IMG/VR virus record: IMGVR_UViG_3300028558_000791
Span: 372,001-436,000 of that record
Length of the DNA stretch: 64,000 nt
Strand: one strand, 5' to 3'
The notes below the pieces were generated by a model. The model did no database searches and was not told where the DNA came from. It was given only the letters and a program-made list of their open reading frames with translations. Made by a program: the position numbers and the translations under genes. This document shows, piece by piece, positions 24,801 through 48,021 of the stretch; the first letter of the stretch is position 1, and every line of letters starts with the position of its first letter.

Positions 24801-25034
24801 TTACGCGCCTTTAATTCTGTATACGATTCTTCCTTTGCTTGGATCGTATTCAGAAACTTCAATTTTCACTCTATCACCTAGCAGAATACGAACCGAATTG
24901 ATTCTAATTTTCCCGCTTAGTGAGCAGAGAACTGTATAGGTATCAGTTACTTGAACTTTGAACTGGCCCTTATTGGCATCAATTACTTCGCCTTCAAACT
25001 CTAGTCTATCTCTATCTCTATCTCTATCACTCAA
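24801..25034 (-). CDS. infA: Translation initiation factor IF-1
   Basis: LEFEGEV...FKV...SGKIRINSVRILLGDRVKIEVSEYDPSKGRIVYR. Confidence 0.92.
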   Translation of the reverse strand: MSDRDRDRDRLEFEGEVIDANKGQFKVQVTDTYTVLCSLSGKIRINSVRILLGDRVKIEVSEYDPSKGRIVYRIKGA

Positions 25035-31721: not shown

Positions 31722-32374
31722 ATCTTCGAGAGTTCATTGACCAACGTACCAACTGCCCTATTTGTGATACTGCACTAGTAACACAGTTCATTTCTAATCG
31801 CAAGCAAAAAGTAAAGCTAATAGATAATAGATTTGTGGCAATTTTTGTAATGAAGGCATTGCGAGTTAATCAGCCAGACTATGAGATAGGCTACTCGTTT
31901 GATATGGATAGCAACCATTTCATGGTTGAGTTCTATTCAGAGTGGGATCACTACGAGCAAGTACCCATGCACCTAATAGATAAGTTCAAAGAGTTCCATA
32001 AGAACATGGGAGGATGTAAGTTCTATAGACGATGTACTTTCTGTAATAGGTATAGTAAAAGCTCTACGCCTTTCAGCCTTAATTTCAAGACCCAGAAGAT
32101 GGATACTGAATTGTGGGATGGTATAGAGGTAGCCTATGAATCGTTTGGCTTATCTTTGCCTACCGATGGAGGCTTCAAGATAATGCACCTGAGTAACTTT
32201 CATATACTGGAGCCCAAATCGAACCTGATCTGGTACCGCGCTGACTCAGAGATGTATGCCCGTTTAGACTATACACTACCTAATGCCCGTTCTGAAAAGA
32301 CATTGTCCTTCATTCCATTTGTTTCCAAAGAAGAAACAACAAAGAGGCTGAATAACCTAATAACTTTTGCTTAA
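31718..32374 (+). CDS. CxxC / C-terminal-tail array protein (long type)
   Basis: CPIC; ends KRLNNLITFA. Confidence 0.8.
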   Translation: MNLREFIDQRTNCPICDTALVTQFISNRKQKVKLIDNRFVAIFVMKALRVNQPDYEIGYSFDMDSNHFMVEFYSEWDHYEQVPMHLIDKFKEFHKNMGGCKFYRRCTFCNRYSKSSTPFSLNFKTQKMDTELWDGIEVAYESFGLSLPTDGGFKIMHLSNFHILEPKSNLIWYRADSEMYARLDYTLPNARSEKTLSFIPFVSKEETTKRLNNLITFA

Positions 32375-32937: not shown

Positions 32938-33597
32938 ATGAACCCGAACAAGCTACTTAGATTTGCCAATATGTTCTATTCCCTAGCTGTGGGTGAAGAG
33001 CTGCCATCTGATTCAGATGATTTGAAGGTAGTATTATCGAACATCGAGGGTTTGGAAACTTACAATGCCCGCAAGAATTATGCGGAGCGTAATCTTAAAC
33101 ATTTATCCTCGGGCTCATCGCGCATCGTCTACTTGACACCGAGCAAAACCATCATTAAACTGGCTAAGAATGACAAAGGCATCGCTCAGAATAAGGCGGA
33201 AGCTAATCCTGAGATGAAGTCCAAGTATCTAAACCAAATCATCAGTTCATCCAAAAATGATGCTTGGTTAGAAACCCATTACCTAGATAAGATAACCGAG
33301 AAGGAATTCGAGCAGATGACCGGCCTCAAATTTGAGGATTTCGGAGACTCTCTGCGTTATGGCCTTAAGGACGTATCCGGTAACAAAGATATTGAAAAAC
33401 CTAAAGAGTTTGAGAAGGTATCGAAGACGGACATATATAAGGAGCTACGAGATATCGGTGAACGATTCAAGCTCCTACCTGGTGACATTGCCAGGATTTC
33501 TTCTTGGGGAACCAAAGATGGCCGCCCCATCCTAATTGATGCTGGATTGACACGAGATATCTTCGATGAATTCTACGAAGACTCTGCATCCTCATGA
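32938..33597 (+). CDS. Protein-kinase-like fold enzyme
   Basis: GSSRIVY Gly-loop, IIKLAK, QNxxE, GD...WG, LIDAG. Confidence 0.65.
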   Translation: MNPNKLLRFANMFYSLAVGEELPSDSDDLKVVLSNIEGLETYNARKNYAERNLKHLSSGSSRIVYLTPSKTIIKLAKNDKGIAQNKAEANPEMKSKYLNQIISSSKNDAWLETHYLDKITEKEFEQMTGLKFEDFGDSLRYGLKDVSGNKDIEKPKEFEKVSKTDIYKELRDIGERFKLLPGDIARISSWGTKDGRPILIDAGLTRDIFDEFYEDSASS

Positions 33598-34187
33598 AAC
33601 AATTTAAGAACCTATTCGAAGTACTTCAATACCATTCTAAGTGTCCTTTCTGCTCCGGCAAGATGTCGACAGGATGGGATATGGCTTATGATGAGAATTC
33701 GATTAAAGCTTATCTCAAGTTTGGATTAACAACTCTAACTGTTGATTGCTATAACAATAACATTATAGAATGCCGTCAAACATCTAGCTATAATTACCTA
33801 CCCGCTATTGGAGGTATGGTAAGTCAATACGTAGGCTCATCTTTATCTGATCTTTCGTCTAAAGGTATTGATATCCGCCGTCTGAACATATCTTGTGATG
33901 TTTGCAGTAAGTATTCTTATTTGATTCAAGTACATATTTCACTTGAGCACGGCAAACTTATAGCGTTAGTTCTTAATTCAGAGTCCGCTTCAATTGAAGA
34001 GGGCACTAAATTGTATGAGATTAAGAACATCTATACAACCGAAAAGACAGAAATGTCCACGTTTCATACTCACCTCTCCAGTGCGAGAGGCGCACTAGAC
34101 AAGGTAGAGCTTCCGCTCGTTCCTCTGGACCTTCAGAATCCACTGAAGACTGTAGGGCGTATCAAGAATCTCCTCGTATTTTTGTGA
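33594..34187 (+). CDS. CxxC / C-terminal-tail array protein (long type)
   Basis: CPFC; ends GRIKNLLVFL. Confidence 0.8.
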   Translation: MKQFKNLFEVLQYHSKCPFCSGKMSTGWDMAYDENSIKAYLKFGLTTLTVDCYNNNIIECRQTSSYNYLPAIGGMVSQYVGSSLSDLSSKGIDIRRLNISCDVCSKYSYLIQVHISLEHGKLIALVLNSESASIEEGTKLYEIKNIYTTEKTEMSTFHTHLSSARGALDKVELPLVPLDLQNPLKTVGRIKNLLVFL

Positions 34188-34191
34188 AGAC

Positions 34192-34812
34192 ATGACAGAT
34201 AAATTTGAGTCCATCCTTGAGTTTACCAAACTCAAGGAGGAATGTGTATTTTGTAAAACACCATTACGTGCCCACTTAACTAATTTCGTTGGCCTTAATG
34301 AAGTTGGTTTAGCAATCATTAATGCTCCCCTAAAAGATAGTAGGATTGATTTCAAGATAGAACATACTACACCATCCTTTAAAATCAATGCTGATGTTTT
34401 TATCGATGCTACTAAAAATGTCCTTATATTTGATAACTACACTAATGGCGAATTGCCAGCCATAGATGATCATGTAATCAAGCAAACCTTTGAGGATTAT
34501 AGGCCCTATATGGAGCTTTATTGTCCTAGCAAGAAATGTGGTTTGAACTATCACCTATGTGGGCATTATATAAAGCTGAAGAAAGTTCATCCTGTCCAAG
34601 GTATGTGGTCAGTTCAGCCATTTAAACTTCTTCTAGAAGGTGTAAGAGTTAAGAATTATGTTATCCATAATGATTGGCATGGTCAGAAGACACGCATCTA
34701 TTCTAGGAACAATTCAGATGCGAAACCTATTGAGATAGCCTTAGTAGACTTCACTACTATGGATAAACAAAAATTAATAACACGAATACAAACGATAGTA
34801 ACATTCTCATGA
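34192..34812 (+). CDS. CxxC / C-terminal-tail array protein (long type)
   Basis: CVFC; ends [10 protein letters not shown]. Confidence 0.8.
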
Positions 34813-35903
34813 ATACCATACAACTAATATACGCCTGCCAAGAAAAGATCAAAGCTCTGGGCACAATGATTCCAGAGGCACAGCACCGTAGGCGCTTGGA
34901 AGAAATAGATGAGATAGTCAGTACCAATCCTAACCTATGGAATGATACTCGCAAAGCTGCTGCCCTAATGAAGGAGCGCACTAAGCTTGCAGACCTTTTA
35001 AGCAAACTAAAGTCTTTCCAAGAACAGGCCGCTTTCAATGCGGAGTTTGCGCAGTTAGCAGGTAATGAAATTGATACTATGTTTGATGATGTCCAACGCC
35101 TCCTTCAAGAGATGACGGATATGGAATTCAAACAGATGATGCAGGACCCTGTAGACGATACTCCTGCCATCATCTCTATTAATGCTGGTGCTGGCGGTCT
35201 AGAGGCAGCTAACTGGGTTACAATGCTATTGCGTATGTATATGCGATATGCCGATAGCCAAGATTTCAAAGTAGAGTTGCTTGACGAGAAGCCATCTGAA
35301 GAACACAGCTCTATTTGTACTGACTCTGTTTCTATTAGAGTAGATGGCCCATATGCTTATGGTTTCTTCAAGTCTGAGTCGGGAGTTCATCGTCTTATTC
35401 GTAATTCTCCATTCAATGCTGCCGATGCAAGACAGACATCATTTGCTGGTGTTCAAGTCTCGCCCGATATTGAAGATACAATTGACATTGTTATCAATGA
35501 TAAGGATATTGAGATTACAGCACAGACAGCAGGTGGCCCAGGAGGACAGAACGTTAATAAGGTGGCCAGTGCTATCAGATTGAAACACATACCAACTGGT
35601 ATTAATATTCTAGTTAGAACGGAACGAGATCAATTATCTAATAAGAAAACAGCTTTGAAGATGCTTAAGGCTCGCTTGTATGATATCGAAATGAAAAAGA
35701 AGCAAGCCGAGATGGATAAGCATATAGCATCTATTTCCGAGGTTTCATTTGGCAATCAAATTAGGACTTATACATTGACCCCTTATCAATTAGTAAAGGA
35801 TGAGCGTACTGGGTTTAAAACTAATGATGCTGATAGTATGTTAGATGGTGACATTCAAGGATTTATGATTGCCTACCTACAGGAATATGATAAAATCGCA
35901 TAA
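34809..35903 (+). CDS. prfB: Peptide chain release factor 2 homologue
   Basis: AGAGG.EA..W..ML.RMY, ESGVHRL, SPF (RF2-specific tripeptide), [17 protein letters not shown]; uninterrupted ORF. Confidence 0.92.
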
Positions 35904-35908
35904 GGAGT

Positions 35909-36493
35909 ATGAGGAAGTTCACCATCAAGGACTTCATAACGTACAATAATCCTTGTTTCAGTTGTGGTAATCAAATCAATTTTCGTATTGGGTTTCTGGA
36001 TTTAGAGACCAAGGCGGACATCTCATACTTGCGCCCCGTGGTTACCCCTACCTATACAGAGGTAGATTTAATCATCAAATACGCCAATACTGACGCTCTA
36101 AAGCTCTACATCTTCCATAAAACTAATAAAATACTAACTAATAGTCAGCAGGGGTTGACAAAGTATCTAGCCAGCCGTAAGTTGTTCTTATCAACTACAT
36201 GTGATAGGTGCTATACGCAGATAGAAAGCCAGTATTTAGATTTCAATATCGATAAGGGTTATGTAGCGGCCGTTGGCATTAGCACTGAGAGGCTAATGGT
36301 ACATGATGGGGATAGCGTATACCAGATTACTTCACATTTTATGGCAGAGAAAAGTAATCTGATTGTTGATAGACTTGACAAAATCAGACCACTTTCACCA
36401 TTTCAATTAGAATTGCCATTGATACCAAAATACAGATTTAAGGATAAGGCGCACTTCATCCAGAAAATGAAGACGTATATAACATTTTCATGA
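35909..36493 (+). CDS. CxxC / C-terminal-tail array protein (long type)
   Basis: CFSC; ends QKMKTYITFS. Confidence 0.8.
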   Translation: MRKFTIKDFITYNNPCFSCGNQINFRIGFLDLETKADISYLRPVVTPTYTEVDLIIKYANTDALKLYIFHKTNKILTNSQQGLTKYLASRKLFLSTTCDRCYTQIESQYLDFNIDKGYVAAVGISTERLMVHDGDSVYQITSHFMAEKSNLIVDRLDKIRPLSPFQLELPLIPKYRFKDKAHFIQKMKTYITFS

Positions 36494-37131
36494 ATTTACA
36501 AGAGATATTGAGCTACCGAGACAGTTGCCTGATATGTGACCGTCCGCTGGTCATGCGAATCAAGGAATATCCTAAACTCTCTATAACTCAGAATGATGAA
36601 GGACTCCAGATACGCTCAGGACATAAAGATGGCGTTCGTCTAAGCTTTGGTTTTGATGGTAAGTATGAGCGTAACAAGCGTGACTACAAGATTCATGCTG
36701 GTCCGGTCTTTATTCAGAAGCGCTGTCAATACCATCCATTGCGCGGCATGCACGTCACTGCCCCAGGTAATGGTAAAATTATCCTCAAGTCACGTAGCGT
36801 CGGGTTAACCACCATGACTAACTTTGGTACCACCTTAGATAGTCTAAAGGACCAGACCTGTCAGTATGGCTTTACCCTATTTGGAGATATCCAGGGTAAC
36901 TATGATGTTAATCTGACAACGGACTTTGTCTATTGGCATGATGACAAAGAGTTCTGGCATGTAAATACTTACTTCACATCGTCATATACTCAGGTTTATC
37001 ACTCAACATTTGAGAATACGATAGACGATGTAATACGAACAAGACTGCAAATTCCAGCAGTTAACCTAAAGAACGTAACCGGCGTACCTCAGTTACTAGA
37101 GAAACTTAAGCTGTATACACTCTTCTCATAA
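36490..37131 (+). CDS. CxxC / C-terminal-tail array protein (long type)
   Basis: CLIC; ends EKLKLYTLFS. Confidence 0.8.
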   Translation: MNLQEILSYRDSCLICDRPLVMRIKEYPKLSITQNDEGLQIRSGHKDGVRLSFGFDGKYERNKRDYKIHAGPVFIQKRCQYHPLRGMHVTAPGNGKIILKSRSVGLTTMTNFGTTLDSLKDQTCQYGFTLFGDIQGNYDVNLTTDFVYWHDDKEFWHVNTYFTSSYTQVYHSTFENTIDDVIRTRLQIPAVNLKNVTGVPQLLEKLKLYTLFS

Positions 37132-37566
37132 GAATGCTTTGAGTCGGTCTAGCCTCTTACAGTAACAGACGGCATCCAATAGATGCTTCATCTTAAGGTT
37201 ACCGAAAGAGTTATGTAAAACCCACTCCTGCCCTTTGAATCTAGAATCTCTCTTAAGGTCAATGCGCTTAGCCTTGGGTTCTAAACTATCATAAATAGCA
37301 ATCTCGAAATCTTTGAATTCTTTTAGCTTGCGAGGGCCGACTAAATCATATGGTAATTGAATCTTGATACTGTACATACCAACTTTAATGGTGTTACGAT
37401 AGAGAGTAATCTCGTTCTCTTTAGCTTCTTCCAAGCTTGCTAAACTACAATGGTCTAACTCGCGCTTTATCTTGTTTTTCGAACTCTTACCGTGACTGAA
37501 ATCGAGTACGATACGAGGTTCTTCATGTGATCGAATGGCTGTCATACTTCCTTGATAGTATGCCAT
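37126..37566 (-). CDS. Hypothetical protein, paralogue of 32371..32937
   Basis: Ends RLDRLKAFL. Confidence 0.7.
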   Translation of the reverse strand: MAYYQGSMTAIRSHEEPRIVLDFSHGKSSKNKIKRELDHCSLASLEEAKENEITLYRNTIKVGMYSIKIQLPYDLVGPRKLKEFKDFEIAIYDSLEPKAKRIDLKRDSRFKGQEWVLHNSFGNLKMKHLLDAVCYCKRLDRLKAFL

Positions 37567-37584
37567 ATACTTGCCATGTTATAG

Positions 37585-37911
37585 GTGTCCATCATGGAAA
37601 AATTTGATTGTCTGGTATGTAATAAAGAGATGGAGATGCATCATAAAATCATGTACATTGACTACTCATGTAATCGATCAGATGATCATCACTTCTCTTG
37701 GCGTATTAAAGACAATAGACTAGTTAAGCTTCGCATTCGGTTTCAAGATAATAGCGAGCGGCTATGTTTGAAAATTCATTATGATGAACAATACTCTGAG
37801 GTATGGTCTAAGTCTGCTAATAGGATACGTATCAATCAAGTGGTCATTCCTAACTTCCAAAATATAGAAGTGCTGAAAAACAAGATTAGAACTATGCTGG
37901 TGTTTGGATGA
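37585..37911 (+). CDS. CxxC / C-terminal-tail array protein
   Basis: CLVC; ends NKIRTMLVFG. Confidence 0.8.
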   Translation: MSIMEKFDCLVCNKEMEMHHKIMYIDYSCNRSDDHHFSWRIKDNRLVKLRIRFQDNSERLCLKIHYDEQYSEVWSKSANRIRINQVVIPNFQNIEVLKNKIRTMLVFG

Positions 37912-38237
37912 AACCGCCCATCAATTGCCCCGTATGTGGCGACCCATTACTTAATACTTTTCCACCCGCTGAAGACCTCAACACACGAGTTACCAAAACA
38001 TGCACTCGTCGAATTAACCACAATATAGTAATACTAGTTGAAGATGATGAGGTAACTCAATTAGCTATTGATATTGGTAATGGGCTTCAAGCTGTATGGC
38101 TATTCCTATTAGGAGCCGTATGGATTCAAGGTATGAAAAAGGATAAGGAAGTGATGGTGCTTCCATTTTTCGAACCCGATCTATCCAACTATAAAAAGCT
38201 GGTTGAGAAAGTAAAAACTTATCTGGTCTTCTCATAA
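37908..38237 (+). CDS. CxxC / C-terminal-tail array protein
   Basis: CPVC; ends EKVKTYLVFS. Confidence 0.8.
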   Translation: MKPPINCPVCGDPLLNTFPPAEDLNTRVTKTCTRRINHNIVILVEDDEVTQLAIDIGNGLQAVWLFLLGAVWIQGMKKDKEVMVLPFFEPDLSNYKKLVEKVKTYLVFS

Positions 38238-38269
38238 AGGAGTGGTATGGGCGCAGTTATATACTTTGT

Positions 38270-38635
38270 ATGGATGACGTCCTGAACTGCCCGATTTGTG
38301 GTAATAAATTAAGAACAAGCCACCATACAAATAAACACATTTACTTCATCGATCAGACTGGTGATTATACTGAGCGTATCTGCTCAAAAGGTCACAATCA
38401 TATCGTTGACATGTGGGTTAATAAGGCCACGAAACAAGTAGATTTCCTTAGGTTGTCCCTCAACTCAAAGTATTCTCGTTTTTTGGAGATTGATTACGTA
38501 AACCAAAAGTGTCGCATCTCCTGCGTCAAAGATGGTGAGTACGAGTATATCAACGTTCCTAAGATGATTGAACCAGACTTCCCTGATTTAGAAAAACTAA
38601 AAGAACGTGTAAGCCTCTACGTAGTATTCTCATGA
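38270..38635 (+). CDS. CxxC / C-terminal-tail array protein
   Basis: CPIC; ends ERVSLYVVFS. Confidence 0.8.
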   Translation: MDDVLNCPICGNKLRTSHHTNKHIYFIDQTGDYTERICSKGHNHIVDMWVNKATKQVDFLRLSLNSKYSRFLEIDYVNQKCRISCVKDGEYEYINVPKMIEPDFPDLEKLKERVSLYVVFS

Positions 38636-38964
38636 ATTGTCTATTCTGTAAACAAGATATGAATGTTGGTGAAAGAACCAAACTTGATTTCTTCTATCGG
38701 TATACCTGTTACTCAATTGAGTGTATGGTTAATAATGATTTCCCTAGATACATTTGCGGAACTGATAAAGAAGGTAGTGTATGTTGGCAAGAGTATGCTT
38801 TAGGCAGCTTCTATGTCAAAGTTAGTGACAATGGCTGTCTTATCTATAGATTAGAGAGCTGTATGCTAACTAATGAGATTAAGATAGCTAGACCTTTATG
38901 GCTCAATCCTACAAATTTCGACCACACGCTTGACAAGCTAAAGCTGATGGTTACATTCTCCTGA
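38632..38964 (+). CDS. CxxC / C-terminal-tail array protein
   Basis: CLFC; ends DKLKLMVTFS. Confidence 0.8.
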   Translation: MNCLFCKQDMNVGERTKLDFFYRYTCYSIECMVNNDFPRYICGTDKEGSVCWQEYALGSFYVKVSDNGCLIYRLESCMLTNEIKIARPLWLNPTNFDHTLDKLKLMVTFS

Positions 38965-38982
38965 AGATAGGGAATAAACTAA

Positions 38983-39327
38983 ATGCGATTCGCGACCCAT
39001 GAATGTCCTCTGTGCAATAATGTTCTCCAAATAAAACTAATGTCCGGAGTAACTACCTACTTCTGTCCAACTAAGATTACAGATGGTAATAACAATATTT
39101 CGCACTATGAAGTAGAGACAGATGGCAAACAAACCATTCAGCATCTCTATGTCTTCCCATATGCTATTGATAACTTTGCCAACGCAGGTAAGTCACGGGT
39201 TTATCTATGGGGAGAAACTAAGTGGCAGTTCCTAATGGAACTTCCTTTTGTCACAGCTCAACCACAAGAAAGTTTGCTGGACCACCTTTACAATGTGGCC
39301 CCTCCATCCTATGACATTGCTATGTAA
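38983..39327 (+). CDS. CxxC array protein lacking the conserved tail
   Basis: CPLC...YFCP; ends PSYDIAM. Confidence 0.75.
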   Translation: MRFATHECPLCNNVLQIKLMSGVTTYFCPTKITDGNNNISHYEVETDGKQTIQHLYVFPYAIDNFANAGKSRVYLWGETKWQFLMELPFVTAQPQESLLDHLYNVAPPSYDIAM

Positions 39328-39679
39328 GTTTTGCCAAGAAGAAGCTGCCTACGTTCCGCTCATCATTAAGGGCGGTAATGGAGATAATAATTTTCATACA
39401 TTCGATGTTCACTATTGCTATAATTGCGCAGCAGAATACGTCAAATGGTCAAGCTCCAATAGCATTCATCTATATACTATCATCAATACTAGAACGTATA
39501 GATGGACATTGAATGAAGGTGGAGCTACTGCTTATCTGTGGTATGTAGGAGAGCCAGGAGAACCAGGAGTGCGCCCCAATAGGAAGATGAAGCTGGTCAA
39601 GACATTCAGTGAACACTTCCCGCCAATCACTCCAGAAAACATAGAACGTAAACTCCGCTTCATGCTATTATTTTTATGA
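39311..39679 (+). CDS. CxxC / C-terminal-tail array protein (start reassigned to MTLLCKFC)
   Basis: CKFC, CYNC; ends RKLRFMLLFL. Confidence 0.8.
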   Translation: MTLLCKFCQEEAAYVPLIIKGGNGDNNFHTFDVHYCYNCAAEYVKWSSSNSIHLYTIINTRTYRWTLNEGGATAYLWYVGEPGEPGVRPNRKMKLVKTFSEHFPPITPENIERKLRFMLLFL

Positions 39680-40200
39680 GAAAAATCGAAATACTACAGT
39701 ACTCTTGCCCTCAATGCAATGCTGACCTGATAGTTAAAGCCGTTGACTTTTTATATAATCAAATGGATGGAGAAAAGACTAAAACATCATACCAGTGTAT
39801 AGGATGCCGAGAAGAGTTCTACTCATTGGAACAAGCGCATGTATCTAATACTAGCCTGACGCCTGAATACAAATGTCCCTACTGCCACCAGCAATGCTCC
39901 TATCTATCCCTTAAGGACGATTGGACTGATTACTGGAAGTGCTTACCATGTAAGGTAGCGTTTCAACAAACTTATAGTGCTAACTTTGCTGGTATCGATA
40001 CTATCAACATGTACACTACCATCAAAGGCAAGCTATTTGTATTGAGACAGTTCCTCAGAGAGAATCGGTCCAGAATAGATATGTTACCAGAAGACCCAGA
40101 GGATACGATTGTAATCGCTAAGGATTTCAATTTCCTGTTCCCTAATCTGCTGCCATCTAACATCCAAGAGAAACTCCTAACCTATCTTGTATTCTCATGA
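39676..40200 (+). CDS. CxxC / C-terminal-tail array protein with two Zn ribbons
   Basis: CPQC, CIGC, CPYC, CLPC; ends EKLLTYLVFS. Confidence 0.8.
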   Translation: MRKIEILQYSCPQCNADLIVKAVDFLYNQMDGEKTKTSYQCIGCREEFYSLEQAHVSNTSLTPEYKCPYCHQQCSYLSLKDDWTDYWKCLPCKVAFQQTYSANFAGIDTINMYTTIKGKLFVLRQFLRENRSRIDMLPEDPEDTIVIAKDFNFLFPNLLPSNIQEKLLTYLVFS

Positions 40201-40535
40201 ACTGTGAATTCTGTAAGAAGCCATTGCGCTTCTCTCATAACGAAAATGATAAAGATATTGAGGTATATGATTGCAATCATTGCCCCGTCCTAACTTCATT
40301 TCACTACCTTCACAAAGATGGTAGCCCAGTCAAGACCACGTTCATGATAGATAAGAATGAGAAGTGTTATCTGTGGACCAACAACTACATCCAGAATATC
40401 TCCTACATTCATGACTTGGGAACATCTATAGCTAGGGAAGGAAAAGACCCAATGATTCTCAAGTTCCCTAAAATTATGAATGTCAATCCAACTAACATTC
40501 ATGAGAAGTTCGCTTTCTATATGGTATTCCTATGA
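40197..40535 (+). CDS. CxxC / C-terminal-tail array protein
   Basis: CEFC, CNHC; ends EKFAFYMVFL. Confidence 0.8.
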   Translation: MNCEFCKKPLRFSHNENDKDIEVYDCNHCPVLTSFHYLHKDGSPVKTTFMIDKNEKCYLWTNNYIQNISYIHDLGTSIAREGKDPMILKFPKIMNVNPTNIHEKFAFYMVFL

Positions 40536-40945
40536 AGCCATTGCAGAACTGTCCATATTGCGGATGTTATCTATCTCGCATCAAACAGAACGAGAGCTGG
40601 CATGAGACCTATTGTTCTGACCGATGCTCCATGAAGTACCATCAGTATTTTGAAGGAGATTTCGATAGCGATAAGCTAAGGTATATCACGTTTGATACGC
40701 CCCGATTCAACGTCTACGTCTATTTTGAGACAGGGTTCTATCCTAATATCGTACACTTCTACTCTCATAAAGAGATGGCCGCTAAGGGAACAGCTATGCC
40801 AATAGTGGATAACTTGCCGTCAAGCAGGATTCCAACCCATGAACTAGAAGAGATGGCTAACTCTCGATATGAGACGGCCACCCAAGCACGGGAATGGTTG
40901 GACAAGGTAGATGAGAAGCTTCATACTCTAGCGTTATTCGCATGA
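40532..40945 (+). CDS. CxxC / C-terminal-tail array protein
   Basis: CPYC; ends EKLHTLALFA. Confidence 0.8.
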   Translation: MKPLQNCPYCGCYLSRIKQNESWHETYCSDRCSMKYHQYFEGDFDSDKLRYITFDTPRFNVYVYFETGFYPNIVHFYSHKEMAAKGTAMPIVDNLPSSRIPTHELEEMANSRYETATQAREWLDKVDEKLHTLALFA

Positions 40946-41274
40946 TCTGTCCATCTTGTGCTAAAGAAATCGGCCGCCCCAAAATGCACACGGCCACGTT
41001 TACTTGCAGTTACTATTGTATGTCATGTAAAGAAGAACATATCGTTTGGGAATCTATTACTCCAGGAGACTATGTAGTCGAGTGGGATAGGTATCGCATT
41101 TACTGCAACACTAAAGATAACACCGCCAAACTTCAAAAGATTTACATGGATATTGAATCAGATACCTCAATTATGTATCGATGGTACACCGTCCTAGAAC
41201 TACCCAATATCCCAGAGAATCTGACGCAAGATACCGCAGAAGAAAAGATTAAACTGTATTTGTTATTCTCATGA
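40942..41274 (+). CDS. CxxC / C-terminal-tail array protein
   Basis: CPSC, CMSC; ends EKIKLYLLFS. Confidence 0.8.
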   Translation: MICPSCAKEIGRPKMHTATFTCSYYCMSCKEEHIVWESITPGDYVVEWDRYRIYCNTKDNTAKLQKIYMDIESDTSIMYRWYTVLELPNIPENLTQDTAEEKIKLYLLFS

Positions 41275-41663
41275 AATGCTATTACTGCCAAAATGAAGTA
41301 GAACAAGACCCAGATAATAGCCCTGGTCCATTCAAAAGCCTGCGGTCCAAATCCTGTGATCACTGTACCAAAACTCATGATATCTATCATGTCTCGTTCA
41401 TCTATGAAACTGATGGTAGTTATCGGTACGCTCATATCTATTTGGATGAGGTAACATATACTACACTCCCAAAGACAGGATTCTCTAATCGCGGTCTAGT
41501 AATAGCTGACAACGAAACCTATCATATTAGATTGAATATGAAGGCAGGAAATACCAGCGTCATGCTATATGGAACGACGGAAGAGATTCTATGCCTACCA
41601 ACTCTTAACATCACTCCCGCCAATGTGCGCGAGAAGATTAAACTCTACCTATTATTCTCATGA
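41271..41663 (+). CDS. CxxC / C-terminal-tail array protein
   Basis: CYYC, CDHC; ends EKIKLYLLFS. Confidence 0.8.
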   Translation: MKCYYCQNEVEQDPDNSPGPFKSLRSKSCDHCTKTHDIYHVSFIYETDGSYRYAHIYLDEVTYTTLPKTGFSNRGLVIADNETYHIRLNMKAGNTSVMLYGTTEEILCLPTLNITPANVREKIKLYLLFS

Positions 41664-42001
41664 AATGTCCTATCTGTGAAGAACATGAACTAGTCACGCA
41701 ATCTCTAGAAGATTGCTATGGCCGGGCTCCAGATGTCTTCTGCCCCAAAGTCATTAGGTTGCCAGATGGTAAGATTGTCAATCATTACCGAGAGTATCCT
41801 GTGGTGGGCGATAAAACAAGAATCTTTGTTTGGCCCTTTAGAGTCATCACCTGGAAAGGCGAGTCTCAGGTTTCAGTAGATTCTCAATATAAGAGATCTA
41901 AAAAGCACTACTTTAAAACAGTTATGAGGATCCCAGCTTTGCATACAGATAAAGAAGATAAACTAAGGGATCGTATCAAGCTATTGATTCTATTATCATG
42001 A
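41660..42001 (+). CDS. CxxC / C-terminal-tail array protein
   Basis: CPIC; ends DRIKLLILLS. Confidence 0.8.
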   Translation: MKCPICEEHELVTQSLEDCYGRAPDVFCPKVIRLPDGKIVNHYREYPVVGDKTRIFVWPFRVITWKGESQVSVDSQYKRSKKHYFKTVMRIPALHTDKEDKLRDRIKLLILLS

Positions 42002-42372
42002 TGAACTGTAGATTTTGCCAGGCTCCAATGCTTCCCAATGAAGATGTTATACCTGACTCAGATACTCAATATTCACACTGCACTTGGGAATGTCATAACT
42101 GTCCAGCTACCGTTAGGCAAAAGAATGAACAACAAGATTGGTTTGCTATTCTGGCCTTTTATAATGGTTATTGGTTTGAAGTCATGCAGATGTATACAGA
42201 AAAGGGAAGCAAAGATCCACCGTTACTATCCATCTATAAACTAACCCCTTACATTAATGATGTTTATGAAGATGCTGTTAAATCAGAGTTTGTCATGGAG
42301 TTGAATGTTAATGGTAACATCACTCCCCAAAACATTAAAGATAAACTGGCCGTCATCCTAACCTTCTCATGA
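41998..42372 (+). CDS. CxxC / C-terminal-tail array protein
   Basis: CRFC, CHNC; ends DKLAVILTFS. Confidence 0.8.
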   Translation: MMNCRFCQAPMLPNEDVIPDSDTQYSHCTWECHNCPATVRQKNEQQDWFAILAFYNGYWFEVMQMYTEKGSKDPPLLSIYKLTPYINDVYEDAVKSEFVMELNVNGNITPQNIKDKLAVILTFS

Positions 42373-42701
42373 TTAACTGTCCATTTTGTAACGCCCAACT
42401 CCGAATCCAAATGTATCAATCCGATTGCAAGGATTGCCAGGTTAACTTCATATCCAGACAAACTGGCCACACATTAGATTCCCCTTGGCATACTTACTAC
42501 TACACCTTTAAGTTTAGAGATGATACCTATCATGCTCTCAATATAGATTTTGAAAAGCAAATCACCACAGTTTGGTTGGTCAATCCCAATTCACCATTAC
42601 ACCAAACTCCATTGCATATTCCTAGAGTCTTCCCAGATACTAATCCTAATAACGCATTAACATTAGCTAGAAAACTACACCACCTAATTGCCTTCACCTA
42701 A
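42369..42701 (+). CDS. CxxC / C-terminal-tail array protein
   Basis: CPFC, CKDC; ends RKLHHLIAFT. Confidence 0.8.
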   Translation: MINCPFCNAQLRIQMYQSDCKDCQVNFISRQTGHTLDSPWHTYYYTFKFRDDTYHALNIDFEKQITTVWLVNPNSPLHQTPLHIPRVFPDTNPNNALTLARKLHHLIAFT

Positions 42702-42759
42702 GCGGCAACACACTCCATTCCGATCTAACCGCCCCAATTCGCGCATGAATCCCTATCTC

Positions 42760-43044
42760 ATGAACTGTCATTACTGTAACCAAATCTGTGAATGCAATGT
42801 CTCCAGTTGGATTTGTCGTAAATGTGGCGCCGAATTTTTCGATGGACATATTAATCTGTATACCGTCATCAATGAAAAACATTATACTTTCCAAATGAGA
42901 TTCGAACATACAGAATTCCCCGCCCGTATCCTGGGAGGACCAATAAGTCAACTGAAACGAATTATCAACCTCCCCAAAATACCTGATAACATCACTCCGT
43001 CCAACGTCAATGAAAAGGTCAGACTATATCTGCTGTTCTCATGA
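42760..43044 (+). CDS. CxxC / C-terminal-tail array protein (start reassigned to MNCHYC)
   Basis: CHYC, CRKC; ends EKVRLYLLFS. Confidence 0.8.
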   Translation: MNCHYCNQICECNVSSWICRKCGAEFFDGHINLYTVINEKHYTFQMRFEHTEFPARILGGPISQLKRIINLPKIPDNITPSNVNEKVRLYLLFS

Positions 43045-43412
43045 TTACCTGCCCCTTCTGCGATAAGCCAGTCCACCTATCCAAGGACGAACGAGACTCC
43101 AATTCTCTGTTGGCTGATACAGATACCGATGACTTCTACTGCCCAACCTATGTAGACACCGCCCCAGGTAGACGCCAGTGCCACTACCAACGCACGACTA
43201 GACAAGGCTGGTATCCAGATTACCACGCCATCATCCCGCCCTTTAGAATCCACTACGTAGAGGGTGAAAGCATTACCGTCTTTACCATAGAGCCCGGCGA
43301 AAACTCCGATATAACCACCTTCAACCTTATCTACGAAGACAAAGTCAACCCAACCTTTGAAGCCTTTGTCAAAATGTATCACCGATTCAAAACCCTCCGA
43401 GCCTTCATATGA
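43041..43412 (+). CDS. CxxC / C-terminal-tail array protein
   Basis: CPFC; ends HRFKTLRAFI. Confidence 0.8.
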   Translation: MITCPFCDKPVHLSKDERDSNSLLADTDTDDFYCPTYVDTAPGRRQCHYQRTTRQGWYPDYHAIIPPFRIHYVEGESITVFTIEPGENSDITTFNLIYEDKVNPTFEAFVKMYHRFKTLRAFI

Positions 43413-43798
43413 TTACCACTCTGAAATGCCATCAGTGCAATAAAGAACTAACTCAGATTGACTGGGATGTCCCAGATGTCGGCCCAATCCCCAATCCAAA
43501 GACCACCATGACCCTGGAATGCCCTGACGTCCATTGCCGTGTTGTCTATGATAAAGAACTCCAGAACATCACCGAGTATACCATCTTCTTCGAAGACGCT
43601 ATCCAACGTAGATATAAAGTCAATGGCTTCCGCCATAACAAATCAACCCACTTCATGGTCAAAAACGGACCCAAACCCTGGAACTACCAAACCGCCCTGC
43701 AAATCAAACGCTTCCTGGCATTCAAACCAAATAAAGAAGGCCAACTGCAAGGCGAAGCTATCTTCCGGAAACTTAAAACCCTACTAACATTCTCATGA
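43409..43798 (+). CDS. CxxC / C-terminal-tail array protein
   Basis: CHQC; ends RKLKTLLTFS. Confidence 0.8.
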   Translation: MITTLKCHQCNKELTQIDWDVPDVGPIPNPKTTMTLECPDVHCRVVYDKELQNITEYTIFFEDAIQRRYKVNGFRHNKSTHFMVKNGPKPWNYQTALQIKRFLAFKPNKEGQLQGEAIFRKLKTLLTFS

Positions 43799-44154
43799 GC
43801 GATCCAACTTGCCGTTTCTGCCATCGTCGTATGACCTGGAGCTGTACCCATATCCCAACTCATATCTCAACTGGTCCCTACAAAGACGAGCAGGTGGATA
43901 GCTACTCTTGTGGTTACTGTGCCTCAGAACAAGACTTCCTAGAAACAGGACAGCCAGCAAGCTATTACTTTATGGTCGGTGCCTATAAACTATGCTTCTA
44001 TCCCCATAACCAAACCTTCCAAGTTAGACACTATCCACAAGGTAGATTAAGTGAGCACATCACCATCGTCATGACTCTCAACTACCTGCCCCATAATCTA
44101 ACCCCATCAACTGTGACTGTGGATAGACTAAAGACACTAATCGTATTCTCATGA
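43795..44154 (+). CDS. CxxC / C-terminal-tail array protein
   Basis: CRFC, CGYC; ends DRLKTLIVFS. Confidence 0.8.
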   Translation: MSDPTCRFCHRRMTWSCTHIPTHISTGPYKDEQVDSYSCGYCASEQDFLETGQPASYYFMVGAYKLCFYPHNQTFQVRHYPQGRLSEHITIVMTLNYLPHNLTPSTVTVDRLKTLIVFS

Positions 44155-44513
44155 ACCCTAAATGTCGATTCTGTAATGGCAAGCAAGAAAACAGCGGTTT
44201 TAAAAGAGAAAACAATATGACTATGTACCGGTACAGATGTAATACCTGTCTGATAGAACAAACTTACCATCCCGATGGCTCTTTGCTAGAAGCTACTTTG
44301 CGTATCCCCATAGATAGAAACACCAAATTTAATCATGGCATGTTCCATTACGTAATAGACTTCAATCCAACTACTATGAACCTAAAGGTAAGAAGTTACG
44401 GCGAAGAATGCGGCTGGAAAGAACACTTCAACGTTAAAGTCACCAACCAGCCCGATTGGTTTAATCCATCTCTTTCAGAAGAAAAACTCAAACTGTATAT
44501 ACTATTCTCATGA
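44151..44513 (+). CDS. CxxC / C-terminal-tail array protein
   Basis: CRFC, CNTC; ends EKLKLYILFS. Confidence 0.8.
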   Translation: MNPKCRFCNGKQENSGFKRENNMTMYRYRCNTCLIEQTYHPDGSLLEATLRIPIDRNTKFNHGMFHYVIDFNPTTMNLKVRSYGEECGWKEHFNVKVTNQPDWFNPSLSEEKLKLYILFS

Positions 44514-44833
44514 ACTGTCTCTTCTGCCAAAAACCTTGCTCCAACAATAGAATCGAATCCCAGCACTATTGCCTGCCTTGCTATGCCACCTTCTTCTACG
44601 AAAATGATATCCTTAACTTCATCGAACTCTGGGTCCAAATTAAAGATCGTAAATACATCGTCAGGCTATGGCAAGAATCCAAAACAACTGAACTAAAACA
44701 AACTAATCCCGTCGATCCCAATAACCTACAAGCAGGTTATTTTCATGAAGTTGTGCTAACTCTAGATTACTTAGCAAATGTCTCCCCAAGTAATATCGAA
44801 TCTAAAGTACAAACTATGTTGACTTTCCTATGA
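44510..44833 (+). CDS. CxxC / C-terminal-tail array protein
   Basis: CLFC, CLPC; ends SKVQTMLTFL. Confidence 0.8.
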   Translation: MNCLFCQKPCSNNRIESQHYCLPCYATFFYENDILNFIELWVQIKDRKYIVRLWQESKTTELKQTNPVDPNNLQAGYFHEVVLTLDYLANVSPSNIESKVQTMLTFL

Positions 44834-45156
44834 TTTGTCGTTATTGCAATCAACCATGTCGCCTAATCACAAAAGGCTCTTTGCCCGATGGACTGGCAGA
44901 AAACAGAATCGCCCACTGCGACCCATGCAATGTCAAATACTTCGATAGATTCCATGTCCTGGTCTGCAATATCAAAGATACCGAATACTCCGTCTCCTAT
45001 ATGGATGACCACCCAAACCACTGGACTTCTATCTACCAATACAACAAAAAGGAAAGGCCCAGGGTGCATGATATCGCCCTGAGCTTCCAATTCCATGTTA
45101 GGTTCACCCCAGCTAACTTCAAAGAAAAGCTAAAGATATACCTGCTGTTCAGTTAG
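44830..45156 (+). CDS. CxxC / C-terminal-tail array protein
   Basis: CRYC, CDPC; ends EKLKIYLLFS. Confidence 0.8.
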   Translation: MICRYCNQPCRLITKGSLPDGLAENRIAHCDPCNVKYFDRFHVLVCNIKDTEYSVSYMDDHPNHWTSIYQYNKKERPRVHDIALSFQFHVRFTPANFKEKLKIYLLFS

Positions 45157-45851: not shown

Positions 45852-45874
45852 GATAACACCTAAAATAAGGTTAC

Positions 45875-47455: not shown

Positions 47456-47810
47456 GTTGAATCTCCTGCTATTGAGAAAGTGAGAGAGTAAAAGAGAGAG
47501 AGAGGGTACAATCTGCCTGTATGCCATTATAGCCCAAGCGTATGCCTAACTGCAAAAACATATGTTTATAATGCGATAAGATGCTTTGAGAAATACCTAA
47601 TTTATATTTGCTAGTTTTGTCGTACCTATATCCTGAATAGACGCTAATAGGACACCCATATCGTCCATATGGGATACCAGAGCACACTCTAACTGCCCCA
47701 GATAGTCACTTGATGGTCACTTGATAGCTGTTAGACCCCTATTTGGGAGGCGAACTGCCACCGCGCACGACAATGGCCCACACTTTTCCAGTAGGGGTAT
47801 AATGGGGCTT

Positions 47811-47843
47811 TGGCATAGCCTTTGCAATATGCAATCTATGCCA
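47811..47843. promoter_or_regulatory. Inverted sigma54-like element, copy 1 (right arm 2 nt short)
   Basis: TGGCATAGCCTTTGCA-ata-TGCAATCTATGCCA. Confidence 0.55.
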
Positions 47844-47917
47844 ACTACATGTAGTATGATCTCTTTCCTTTCGATCACATCACATTATGTGTAGTATATT
47901 TCAATACATAGCAGAGA

Positions 47918-47952: not shown

Positions 47953-48021
47953 GGTGGGATAAGGTGAGAGGTCTTTGGCTCCCATTCACTGTCTGATCTT
48001 ACCCAAGATCGAGGTGATTCG

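What the first reader, a model, noticed from the sequence alone, without database searches (positions are those of the whole stretch)
34801..44833. TTCTCATGA stop/start junction chains the array, and the phage's own UGA-reading release factor is wired into the chain
Seen: about 20 ATGA overlaps between 31718 and 44833, many with the context TTCTCATGA, and no obvious Shine-Dalgarno at these junctions. The RF2 gene (SPF and GGQ motifs) itself starts at one (ACATTCTCATGA, 34801-34812). The uncoupled start at 42760 still has TATCTCATGA. Established: RF2 terminates at UGA/UAA, and most bacterial prfB genes are autoregulated by a +1 frameshift, which is absent here. Inference: array expression may run by termination-reinitiation at UGA, boosted by a non-autoregulated phage RF2 (IF-1 is also encoded, at 24801). 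The junction could also be a micro-homology for gene gain and loss.
Basis: partly seen in the sequence, partly recalled or inferred. Interest (0 to 1): 0.62.

Follow-up and report, generated by a model that had tools for sequence, protein, structure and literature searches.

The report
Coupled phage gene array holding RF2
The repeated TTCTCATGA is real, but it is mostly the DNA image of a conserved Phe-Ser protein end overlapping the next gene's start, in a roughly 25-gene family of unknown function in a 481-kb phage; a link between the embedded RF2 gene and restart of translation is possible but unproven.

Summary
There are 20 ATGA stop/start overlaps between 31718 and 44833. Ten are exact TTCTCATGA (0.1-0.2 expected), and there is almost no Shine-Dalgarno (SD) sequence, unlike the rest of the genome.

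The motif is not a nucleotide signal. The array holds about 25 ancient paralogues of an unannotated huge-phage family. Each has an N-terminal zinc ribbon, a beta-sheet body and a C-terminal helix ending in Phe-Ser.

Among 237 members in 14 phages, Phe-Ser persists with TAA, TAG or non-overlapping TGA stops. There Ser uses all six codons. TCA and TGA are forced only by the 4-nt overlap.

SD-less overlaps make termination-reinitiation the likeliest way the array is translated. This was not tested.

RF2 (34809-35903) is a true prfB without a frameshift. It sits between large family members in nearly all relatives, and its start is ATGA-coupled in the seven nearest.

RF2 lies in a sub-operon separate from the main small-gene array. 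One relative has the array without RF2 at that site.

The phage also carries two amber-suppressor tRNAs, and 94% of its genes end in TAA or TGA. That gives RF2 a genome-wide role as a rival explanation.

Three whole-gene insertions or deletions start and end at the junction, which supports the recombination idea.

The parts
30840..31721 (+). Leading gene of + block A (293 aa, FGE-sulfatase-like domain); its TGA overlaps the ATG of 31718
31718..32374 (+). Large family member (218 aa): CPxC zinc knuckle and tail ...LITFA; stop TAA
32371..32937 (-). Minus-strand gene that interrupts the chain (likely start ATG at 32892). It is conserved in relatives, has a tail ...KKLSAFL and no zinc knuckle
32938..33597 (+). 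Conserved 219-aa gene of unknown function, not a family member. It leads + block C and has an ATGA overlap onto 33594
33594..34187 (+). Large family member (197 aa), tail ...NLLVFL
34192..34812 (+). Large family member (206 aa), tail ...IVTFS; its TGA overlaps the RF2 ATG
34801..34812 (+). Junction ACATTCTCATGA, which codes Thr-Phe-Ser-stop of 34192-34812 and overlaps the Met-Asn start of RF2
34809..35903 (+). Peptide chain release factor 2 (prfB), 364 aa, uninterrupted ORF with SPF and GGQ; stop TAA
35909..36493 (+). Large family member (194 aa). Its start is preceded by AAGGAG, which spans the RF2 stop. AF2 model: pLDDT 92.5, 12 strands plus a C-terminal helix at 180-192
36490..37131 (+). 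Large family member (213 aa), ATGA-coupled, tail ...LYTLFS; stop TAA. It ends block C
37126..37566 (-). Second minus-strand gene that splits the array (146 aa, tail ...RLKAFL), conserved in relatives
37594..45156 (+). Main array (block E) of 20 small paralogues of 107-174 aa. The longest unbroken ATGA runs are 39293->42701 (8 junctions) and 42760->45156 (6 junctions). The last member ends LFS-TAG
42702..42759 (+). 58-nt spacer that ends with two ATGA 15 nt apart (ATGAATCCCTATCTCATGA). It may be the relic of a deleted member
38238..38269 (+). 32-nt spacer with AAGGAG. L005 and L012 carry one extra family gene here; in the window it is absent exactly from tail to tail
24801..25034 (-). Translation initiation factor IF-1 (infA), about 10 kb upstream on the other strand; not part of the array

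Best explanation
The window comes from a 480,838-bp virus record, a huge phage from a rhizosphere metagenome. Positions 31718-45156 hold about 25 ancient paralogues of an unannotated protein family. About 20 are small (107-174 aa) and 5 are large (194-218 aa). Each has an N-terminal zinc ribbon (CxxC...C), a beta-sheet body and a C-terminal amphipathic helix that usually ends in Phe-Ser.

TTCTCATGA arises from two stacked constraints:
1. Purifying selection keeps the Phe-Ser C-terminus of each protein. This is shown.
2. A 4-nt ATGA overlap with the next cistron forces the last codon to NNA, so Ser becomes TCA, and forces the stop to TGA. This is shown.

The last ten or so codons are taken up by the hydrophobic helix, so no SD can be encoded there. 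The downstream cistrons are therefore most likely translated by termination-reinitiation, that is, classical translational coupling. This is inferred, not tested.

The overlap also stabilises itself. Any single change in ATGA destroys either a start or a stop.

RF2 is a real prfB without a frameshift. It lies between large members of the family, in a proximal sub-operon (32938-37131) that is separate from the main small-gene array. In this phage and its six nearest relatives it is ATGA-coupled to the preceding member, so it is probably co-translated with that sub-operon.

The likeliest job of RF2 is genome-wide termination at UGA and UAA. These end about 94% of the phage's genes, 44% of them UGA. 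The phage also brings two amber-suppressor tRNAs and hardly uses UAG. This is inferred. A specific stimulation of restart in the array is possible but unsupported.

The junction island is the tail of gene n plus the Met-x-Cys-x-x-Cys start of gene n+1. It spans about 30-57 nt at 60-80% identity. It is the only stretch among these paralogues, which share 22-26% amino-acid identity, that is similar enough to recombine. Whole-gene gains and losses in relatives begin and end there.
For: **Family and fold**
- HMM searches find 25 members in the array and 4 dispersed copies elsewhere in the genome.
- In the alignment of 73 members C3, C6 and C26 are invariant and the penultimate Phe is at least 90% conserved.
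- AF2 models have pLDDT 91.7 and 92.5, and the tail forms a confident C-terminal helix.

**Selection acts on the amino acids**
- 237 members were collected from 14 phages.
- The penultimate Phe is present in 125/136 ATGA-type, 53/59 TAA-type, 27/30 other TGA-type and 9/12 TAG-type ends.
- The last residue is Ser in 63-75% of each class.
- In the non-overlapping classes Ser is coded by TCT, TCG, TCC, AGT, AGC and TCA. All ATGA-type ends use an NNA codon.
- The four dispersed copies in this genome end ...LVFS...VLFQ...LILFS and ...LIFS, with TAA or TGA stops and no overlap.

**Indications of coupling**
- ATGA overlaps are 80% of array junctions against 15% elsewhere.
- SD-like sequences occur at 7% of array starts against 43-62% elsewhere, and at 3% of 103 ATGA junctions across the clade.
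- Start regions are less structured than gene interiors: -6.4 against -8.8 kcal/mol, p = 4e-4.
- Overlapping ATGA pairs were strictly coupled in 13 of 14 tested cases in H. volcanii and E. coli, with a variable need for SD (PMC6728339).

**RF2**
- It scores 383 bits against TIGR00020, above the 370-bit cut-off.
- None of 14 phage-type genes has CTTTGA, against 19 of 33 cellular homologues.
- The block 27160-46777 is collinear in the five nearest relatives compared gene by gene (L001, L002, L003, L005, L012).
- RF2 starts at an ATGA overlap after a family-type tail in the window, L001, L002, L003, L005, L012 and L006.

**Stop usage and tRNAs**
- Crude gene calls give TAA 310, TGA 275 and TAG 37.
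- Two tRNA-CUA genes have good cloverleaf folds.
- A relative with a complete genome, G009, also has a tRNA-CUA.

**Insertions and deletions at the junction**
- The gene L005 13414-13764 is absent from the window exactly from tail to tail.
- Window gene 41271-41663 is absent from L005 exactly from ATGA to ATGA.
- Window gene 42369-42701 is also absent from L005. There the orthologues of its neighbours are joined directly by an ATGA; one of them matches at only 25% identity.
- The two junctions flanking 41271-41663 are the second most similar of 300 junction pairs.
Against: - No expression data exist. Only DNA runs hold this sequence, so operon structure and coupling are inferred.
- A chain of 8 consecutive restarts would need about 75% efficiency or more per junction to keep 10% output. 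Such efficiency is unproven, which leaves room for SD-independent de novo initiation.
- Family genes that follow a spacer also rarely show SD (15%; start calls there are crude).
- The AF2 models are predictions, and no known fold or function was found.
- The co-occurrence of RF2 with tRNA-CUA was checked in only two genomes.
- The truncated array of L012 leaves a 7-codon relic of the next gene, so not every breakpoint lies at the junction.
Confidence: 0.7

Rival explanations
1. One reading: the phage RF2, which lacks autoregulation, is a dedicated part of the array's expression system. Fast termination at the overlapping UGA raises restart efficiency along the chain, perhaps with help from phage IF-1.
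For: - RF2 lies inside the family locus in nearly all relatives with enough flanking sequence, and it is ATGA-coupled to a family member in the seven nearest genomes.
- 70% of family genes end in TGA.
- A complete related genome (G002, 472 kb) lacks both RF2 and the family, while G007 (complete) and the incomplete G006 hold the family and carry RF2. RF2 and family members were also found in loci of three further near-complete genomes: G008, G009 and G010.
- No frameshift site is present.
Against: - The whole 20-kb block is collinear, so the adjacency may simply be inherited gene order.
- RF2 sits in a different + strand block from the 20-gene small array, ends in TAA, and is followed by an SD-led start.
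- Five relatives have an uncoupled RF2 with a spacer or an SD.
- L026 has an ATGA/FS-chained array but no RF2 at the site or in the 118 kb available.
- Relatives with mostly TAA stops and few overlaps (L008, L014) still keep RF2.
- RF2 would act in trans on every UGA or UAA, not only on those in the array.
Confidence: 0.15
2. RF2 belongs to a stop-codon strategy rather than to the array. With two amber-suppressor tRNAs, the phage reads UAG through, either in host genes or in a few of its own. Its own RF2 then guarantees termination at UAA and UGA, the only stops the phage relies on. This resembles the 'code-change' modules of TAG-recoded phages.
For: - Two tRNA-CUA genes fold well.
- TAG ends only 37 of 622 crude genes, and almost none between 180 and 420 kb.
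- Two family genes in relatives end in TAG followed directly by TAA.
- RF2 together with tRNA-CUA is the pattern reported for TAG-recoded Lak, Agate and jumbo phages (bioRxiv 10.1101/2021.08.26.457843; PMC13037316).
- G009, a relative with a complete genome, also has a tRNA-CUA.
Against: - No in-frame TAG was found in convincing genes.
- In-frame extensions after TAG are no longer than those after TAA or TGA.
- A Pfam domain starts right after one candidate TAG.
- Reading through TAG does not raise coding density beyond what any stop would give.
- TAG clearly ends family genes at the conserved tail.
- The idea does not explain why RF2 sits inside the array.
Confidence: 0.3
3. There is no coupling. 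Each array gene is started de novo without SD, at an unstructured, A-rich start region, possibly through S1 or IF-1. The ATGA overlaps are only compact packing inherited through duplication.
For: - Start windows are less structured than gene interiors.
- Family genes that follow spacers also rarely show SD.
- A long chain relying only on restart would lose output steeply.
- The ATGA overlap stabilises itself, so its conservation does not prove selection for coupling.
Against: - The same genome uses SD at 43-62% of other genes, including other ATGA overlaps.
- Overlaps are five times more frequent in the array.
- Tested ATGA pairs are almost always coupled (PMC6728339).
Confidence: 0.2
4. TTCTCATGA is itself a selected nucleotide signal, for example a restart enhancer, a recombination site, or a protein or restriction site (TCATGA is palindromic).
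For: - Ten exact copies occur where 0.1-0.2 are expected.
- TTC is preferred over TTT at overlapping junctions, 77:48 against 39:50, p = 0.012.
Against: - Where there is no overlap, the same Phe-Ser end is written with five other Ser codons and with TTT.
- Dispersed copies keep the Phe-Ser end without the motif.
- Overlapping junctions also use CTA, TTA, ATA and other codons.
- The motif is absent from other ATGA overlaps in the genome.
Confidence: 0.05

Closest known systems
Translational coupling by termination-reinitiation at ATGA or TGATG overlaps (Huber et al. 2019, PMC6728339)
   Same: Co-directional genes with a 4-nt stop/start overlap. The downstream start sits inside the upstream gene's end. 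SD is known to be dispensable in some pairs.
   Different: Up to 8 consecutive overlaps occur in one family array. SD is almost completely absent, in a genome that otherwise uses it, because a conserved hydrophobic tail occupies the SD window. Coupling has not been tested here.
Release factors encoded by huge or jumbo phages (Al-Shayeb et al. 2020, PMC7162821; Borges et al. preprint 10.1101/2021.08.26.457843; PMC13037316)
   Same: A bacterial-type RF2 is carried by a phage of more than 400 kb, together with many tRNAs, a tmRNA, IF-1 and tRNA-CUA suppressors.
   Different: No TAG recoding was detected in this genome. RF2 is embedded in, and in the nearest relatives ATGA-coupled to, a paralogue array. 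Those papers do not describe such an arrangement in the passages read.
Bacterial prfB with its +1 programmed frameshift for autoregulation
   Same: PCRF and RF-1 domains, SPF and GGQ motifs, and a score above the TIGR00020 cut-off.
   Different: A single open frame without a CTTTGA site in all 14 phage-type genes. Identity to the best cellular homologues is only about 40-45% (one row lists 52% for its best segment).
Tandem multigene families of small proteins in large phages
   Same: Many diverged paralogues lie head to tail, and copy number varies between relatives (0, 5 or 8 genes at the far end of the array in L012, L005 and the window).
   Different: This family has no Pfam or PHROG model and no convincing structural neighbour. 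It carries an unusually conserved C-terminal Phe-Ser end. Function is unknown.

Membership tests
Class-I release factor RF2 (prfB, TIGR00020) | PCRF and RF-1 domains, and a whole-protein score above the curated cut-off | tested here: met
   PF03462 at 3e-44 and PF00472 at 6e-33. TIGR00020 scores 383.4 bits against a 370-bit cut-off; the RF1 models fall far below their cut-offs.
Class-I release factor RF2 (prfB, TIGR00020) | SPF stop-codon recognition tripeptide and GGQ hydrolysis motif | tested here: met
   Both are present in the window's protein and in 12 of 13 relatives read as one ORF. L004 is interrupted by an in-frame TAA but has both motifs downstream.
Class-I release factor RF2 (prfB, TIGR00020) | +1 programmed frameshift at CTT TGA (common in bacteria, not defining) | tested here: not met
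   0 of 14 phage-type genes have CTTTGA near the 5' end, against 19 of 33 cellular homologues. The phage ORFs are contiguous from the ATG.
Translationally coupled overlapping gene pairs (termination-reinitiation) | Co-directional genes with a 4-nt (ATGA) or 1-nt overlap | tested here: met
   20 of 25 junctions in the array; 136 of 237 family genes across the clade.
Translationally coupled overlapping gene pairs (termination-reinitiation) | Translation of the downstream gene depends on translation of the upstream gene | not testable with these tools
   No RNA or ribosome data exist; only DNA runs hold the sequence.
Stop-codon-recoded phage with a code-change module (suppressor tRNA plus release factor) | A suppressor tRNA for the recoded stop, and a release factor that does not read that stop | tested here: met
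   Two tRNA-CUA genes; RF2.
Stop-codon-recoded phage with a code-change module (suppressor tRNA plus release factor) | In-frame recoded stops (TAG) inside real genes, and higher coding density under the alternative code | tested here: not met
   Searches show no excess of same-frame continuation after TAG. A Metallophos_2 domain starts right after one candidate TAG. TAG ends family genes at the conserved tail.
Any curated protein family for the array proteins (Pfam, PHROGs, NCBIfam) | A significant profile match | tested here: not met
   No Pfam hit for seven of the eight members scanned; the one row, CKS (E 0.005, 17.4 bits), is below its 27-bit cut-off. Only scattered PHROG hits at E of about 1e-3 or weaker in 73 members. 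More than 214 metagenomic homologues were found; nearly all are unnamed or 'hypothetical' and none carries a Pfam domain.
Tubby / LURP-one-related-like fold (beta sheet around a C-terminal helix) | Structural superposition clearly above noise | tested here: inconclusive
   ESM Atlas rows with LOR, scramblase or Tubby_C_like families reach only TM 0.48-0.54 over 73-77 residues. The best PDB Z-scores are 6.0 and 5.6, within noise.

The most novel reading that the evidence does not exclude
The array, RF2 and perhaps IF-1 form a phage-specified translation mode. It would be an SD-free 'conveyor' in which ribosomes are passed from cistron to cistron through UGA-overlapping starts. A phage RF2 freed from autoregulation, and itself fed by the conveyor, would set the restart efficiency. 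The conserved C-terminal helix would then serve both as a fold element and as the nascent-chain or mRNA context for restart.
Probability: 0.1. Interest if true: 0.75.

Novelty: new member of a known kind. Interest (0 to 1): 0.42.

Why it matters
This case shows how a striking nucleotide repeat can come from protein-level selection combined with gene overlap. That warns against reading such repeats as regulatory signals.

It also defines an unannotated family with a confidently predicted fold, expanded to about 25 copies in a clade of 390-480 kb environmental phages (at least one from a rhizosphere sample).

Finally, it offers a natural test bed for two questions. How efficient can SD-independent termination-reinitiation be over many consecutive cistrons? 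And does a phage-encoded RF2 change that efficiency?

If RF2 proved to tune restart, that would be a new role for virus-encoded release factors. So far they are discussed only in connection with stop-codon recoding.

Tried and rejected
**Protein family and fold searches (no function found)**
- Pfam, PHROGs and NCBIfam scans of array proteins gave nothing usable.
- Foldseek against the PDB, VIA-align wide, BFVD and the ESM Atlas were run for two confident AF2 models. Only uncharacterised phage proteins matched clearly. PDB Z-scores were 6 or less, and Atlas TM-scores about 0.5.
- The feature search of the protein atlas gave scores of 0.86 or less, so no lead.

**Searches for relatives**
- Megablast of the array against the phage collection found no match.
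A conserved neighbouring gene was used as the anchor instead.

**Expression and population data**
- The sigma-70 promoter scan found 61 sites against 52.6 expected, which is uninformative. The only strong terminator is at 30642-30672, outside the array.
- Sequencing runs: two rhizosphere DNA metagenomes hold the sequence and no RNA run does. Laying their contigs on 39300-45250 (5,951 letters, within the operators' limit) showed identical sequence with no joints, so no population-level insertions or deletions.

**Genetic code**
- TAG, TAA and TGA recoding was tested mechanically and with Pfam scans on separate segments, and was rejected. No alternative genetic code was named in any tool.

**tRNA and host**
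- A DNA-level search for tRNA-CUA in five relatives found one. The method is too insensitive to count the others as lacking it.
- Host inference from RF2 failed. The nearest cellular homologues reach only about 40-45% identity (one row lists 52% for its best segment) and are spread over several phyla.

**Not run**
- The large representative protein search was not used, because the word search had already shown the family to be widespread and unnamed.

Full report
**Context**

The window is positions 372001-436000 of a single 480,838-bp contig that the genome tool labels a virus record. The contig has 43% GC, 58 tRNA calls and a tmRNA. Two rhizosphere metagenomes hold the sequence. Coding density and the behaviour of frames after each stop codon fit the standard bacterial code.

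**The observation**

- Exact TTCTCATGA occurs ten times on the + strand within 31000-45200, where Markov models of order 1-3 expect 0.12-0.20. It is essentially absent from the other 467 kb: 1 copy on the + strand and 6 on the - strand, with about 3.7 expected per strand.
- With crude ORF-based gene calls, ATGA overlaps make up 20 of 25 co-directional junctions in the array and 76 of 491 elsewhere.
- SD-like tetramers at -20..-4 are found at 7% of array starts, and none is GGAG or GAGG. Other genes of the same genome show 43-62%, including 54% at other ATGA overlaps, and random positions show 16%.

So the genome uses SD in general, and the array stands out by lacking it. This includes ACATTCTCATGA at 34801-34812, TATCTCATGA before 42760 and IF-1 at 24801-25034 on the minus strand.

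**What the array is**

Translation shows that almost every + strand gene from 31718 to 45156 starts with M-x-C-x-x-C. Almost every one ends with a hydrophobic tail of the type K-L-K-x-Y-L-x-F-S.
- An HMM built from the small genes finds 25 members in the array and four dispersed copies elsewhere in the genome.
- The paralogues are old. The best pairwise identities inside the window are 22-26%.
- In an alignment of 73 members from this phage and its relatives, three cysteines are invariant and the penultimate Phe is at least 90% conserved.
- AlphaFold2 gives confident models. The 112-aa member 40197-40535 has pLDDT 91.7: a zinc ribbon, seven strands and a C-terminal helix at 101-110. The 194-aa member 35909-36493 has pLDDT 92.5: twelve strands and a C-terminal helix at 180-192.
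- The conserved tail is therefore a structural helix of the protein.
- No Pfam, PHROG or NCBIfam model matches.
- The word-index protein search finds more than 214 metagenomic homologues. Nearly all are unnamed or called 'hypothetical' and none carries a Pfam domain. Some lie on contigs of 480-511 kb.
- BFVD returns only 'uncharacterized protein [uncultured Caudovirales phage]'.
- PDB comparisons stay within noise (Z of 6.0 or less).
- The ESM Atlas gives TM of about 0.5 to LOR/tubby-like barrels. That is a lead, not a finding.

**Why the nine bases repeat**

RF2 was used to fetch 14 related loci from IMG/VR contigs of up to 448 kb, with RF2 identity of 49-69%. Every one carries the family around RF2. 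An iterated HMM collected 237 members.

| End type | Members | Penultimate Phe |
|---|---|---|
| ATGA overlap | 136 | 125 |
| TAA | 59 | 53 |
| TGA without an ATG overlap | 30 | 27 |
| TAG | 12 | 9 |

- The last residue is Ser in 63-75% of each class.
- Where there is no overlap, Ser is written with all six codons.
- Where there is an overlap, the last codon is always NNA: TCA in 85 cases, and otherwise CTA, TTA, ATA and others.
- The four dispersed copies in this genome end in ...LVFS...VLFQ...LILFS and ...LIFS. They use TCG, AGT or TCT for Ser where the last residue is Ser, TAA or TGA stops, and no overlap.

The conserved entity is therefore the Phe-Ser C-terminus. TCA and TGA follow mechanically from the 4-nt overlap. 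TTC is slightly preferred over TTT at overlapping junctions (77:48 against 39:50, p = 0.012). That is the only hint of an extra nucleotide-level preference.

**How the array is probably translated**

The SD window of each downstream gene lies in the codons of the hydrophobic helix, which cannot spell GGAG. Across the clade only 3% of 103 ATGA junctions have an SD-like tetramer.

Start regions are less structured than gene interiors (-6.4 against -8.8 kcal/mol, p = 4e-4).

In published tests, 13 of 14 overlapping pairs were strictly coupled by termination-reinitiation, and the need for SD ranged from essential to none (PMC6728339). Coupling by termination-reinitiation is thus the best-supported mechanism here, but it is inferred.

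Two cautions apply:
1. The ATGA overlap stabilises itself, because any single change destroys a start or a stop. That all ten orthologous junctions compared between the window and L005 are ATGA in both therefore does not prove selection for coupling.
2. The longest unbroken runs have 8 and 6 junctions. Restart would need to be at least about 75% efficient per junction to keep 10% output at the end. Otherwise expression is graded, or SD-independent de novo initiation contributes. Family genes that follow spacers also rarely show SD (15% with crude start calls).

**RF2**

The ORF 34809-35903 has the PCRF and RF-1 domains. It passes the TIGR00020 cut-off (383 against 370 bits) and carries SPF and GGQ.
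- None of the 14 phage-type genes has a CTTTGA shift site, against 19 of 33 cellular homologues. The alignments of most cellular homologues start only at residues 24-43, as expected downstream of a frameshift.
- The nearest cellular RF2 proteins are only about 40-45% identical (one row lists 52% for its best segment) and come from several phyla, so no host can be read from them.

The position of RF2 is conserved. The whole block 27160-46777 is collinear with L005, L012 and L001-L003, gene for gene. In a second set anchored on the neighbouring gene 32938-33597, 12 of the 19 loci have RF2 1-3 kb downstream. Of the other seven, L021 and L029 end too close to the anchor to tell. L026 and L031 lack RF2 although family members follow the anchor. 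L032, L034 and L035 lack both RF2 and the family.

RF2's start overlaps the stop of a family-type tail (...TFS, or ...LLMQ in L006) in the window, L001, L002, L003, L005, L012 and L006.

1. Two conserved minus-strand genes (32371-32937 and 37126-37566) split the + strand into three blocks. RF2 sits in the proximal block with the large members, not in the 20-gene small array.
2. RF2 ends in TAA, and the next gene has AAGGAG across that stop.
3. In L008, L009, L011, L013 and L014 RF2 is preceded by a spacer or an SD, not by an overlap.
4. L026 has the syntenic block with an ATGA/FS-chained array but no RF2 there, nor in the 118 kb available. That record is 28% complete.

The family was sought genome-wide in four records. 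It is absent from the complete 472-kb relative G002, which also lacks RF2. It is present in the complete G007, the incomplete G006 and the fragment G001. For the near-complete G008, G009 and G010, RF2 and family members were seen in the loci fetched from them. This is a small sample, confounded by phylogeny.

**A rival role for RF2**

Literature on huge phages reports RF1 and RF2 genes (PMC7162821). It ties RF2 plus tRNA-CUA to TAG recoding (preprint 10.1101/2021.08.26.457843; PMC13037316).

This genome has two well-folded tRNA-CUA genes and a doubtful tRNA-UUA. TAG ends only 37 of 622 crude genes, and almost none between 180 and 420 kb. Yet I found no in-frame TAG in convincing genes, and TAG visibly ends family genes at the tail.

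RF2 may thus secure termination at the two stops the phage relies on while amber suppression is active. That role is genome-wide and independent of the array. G009, a complete relative, also has a tRNA-CUA. The other relatives could not be assessed.

**The junction as a recombination substrate**

The only stretch of appreciable nucleotide identity among the paralogues is the island made of the tail of one gene and the zinc-knuckle start of the next. It spans 30-57 nt at 60-80% identity. The mean over 300 junction pairs is 43%.

Three gene-content differences have junction-to-junction boundaries:
- The gene L005 13414-13764 (and its L012 counterpart) is missing from the window. There the tail of 37908-38237 is joined directly to the spacer that follows the missing gene's tail in L005.
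- Window gene 41271-41663 is missing from L005, where the orthologues of its neighbours are joined by one ATGA. Its two flanking junctions are the second most similar pair of 300.
- Window gene 42369-42701 is also missing from L005. There the orthologues of its neighbours (one matching at only 25% identity) are joined directly by an ATGA.

The far end of the array holds 0, 5 and 8 genes in L012, L005 and the window.

Against a strict rule, L012 keeps a 7-codon relic (M-N-C-E-I-K-N-stop) of the next gene, so that breakpoint lies just beyond the junction. The spacer 42702-42759 ends with two ATGA 15 nt apart and may be a similar relic.

**Verdict**

- Its core is explained by ordinary forces: a conserved protein C-terminus, gene overlap and a paralogous array.
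- Translational coupling is likely but untested.
- The RF2 link is a conserved neighbourhood without functional evidence, and it has a credible alternative.
- The gain-and-loss idea has modest direct support.
- The family itself is unannotated, folds confidently and is widespread in a clade of huge phages from environmental metagenomes. That is the most useful new fact.

Noticed in passing
window 47800-59500 (genome 420-480 kb): GC rises abruptly from about 41% to 52-60%, and genes become short and widely spaced. The region holds at least 25 copies of GCTCCCATTCAC[G/T]G, several of them (e.g. 51419, 53538) 20-30 nt upstream of an SD plus ATG. It also holds at least 7 copies of a sigma-54-like -24/-12 element (TTGGCAT-N5-TTGCA...), at 47810, 47917, 48461, 49367, 51188, 52332 and 52417.
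   Followed up: partly
L004:9986-11080 (IMGVR_UViG_3300028735_000003): The RF2 homologue has an in-frame TAA at codon 69, followed immediately by an in-frame ATG. It is either a split RF2 or a UAA that must be read through or restarted. This is an intriguing parallel to autoregulation, since RF2 itself reads UAA.
   Followed up: partly
genome 172924-172997, 173183-173255, 50073-50149, 170047-170403 (outside the window): There are two well-folded amber-suppressor tRNA-CUA genes, a doubtful tRNA-UUA and a tmRNA (tag ANDNAFAMAA). TAG ends only about 6% of crude gene calls, and almost none between 180 and 420 kb, yet no TAG recoding was found.
   Followed up: partly
window 32371-32937 (-) and 37126-37566 (-): The two minus-strand genes inside the array end in ...KKLSAFL and ...RLKAFL. 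These tails resemble the family's helix, but there is no N-terminal zinc knuckle. Their stops overlap the stops of the convergent + strand genes. The divergent gaps to the next + strand block are only about 20-45 nt.
   Followed up: no
L012:17280-17303: After the last array gene of L012 comes a 7-codon relic ORF (M-N-C-E-I-K-N-stop) of a further family member. This shows that the far end of the array was deleted in that phage.
   Followed up: yes
L026:8900-14300 (IMGVR_UViG_3300023212_000464): This relative has the syntenic block and an ATGA/FS-chained array. It lacks RF2, the large members that flank RF2, and the minus-strand gene between them. The record is only 28% complete.
   Followed up: partly
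L005:19022-19357 and L013:14524-14895: Two family genes end in TAG followed directly by TAA. Such tandem stops would be expected if UAG is leaky in cells that hold the phage's amber suppressors.
   Followed up: no
L042 (JBAYGN010000022.1, filed as a Candidatus Paceibacterota MAG): This 7-kb contig carries a phage-type RF2: 62% identical, aligned from residue 1, with no shift site. It is probably a phage fragment binned into a bacterial MAG.
   Followed up: no
window 3295-7077 (-) and 15313-19653 (+): Two very large proteins (1260 and 1446 aa) each carry a domain like the ubiquitin-activating-enzyme E1 FCCH domain near the N-terminus. A GMP reductase/IMPDH-type gene lies at 23701-24744 (-).
   Followed up: no
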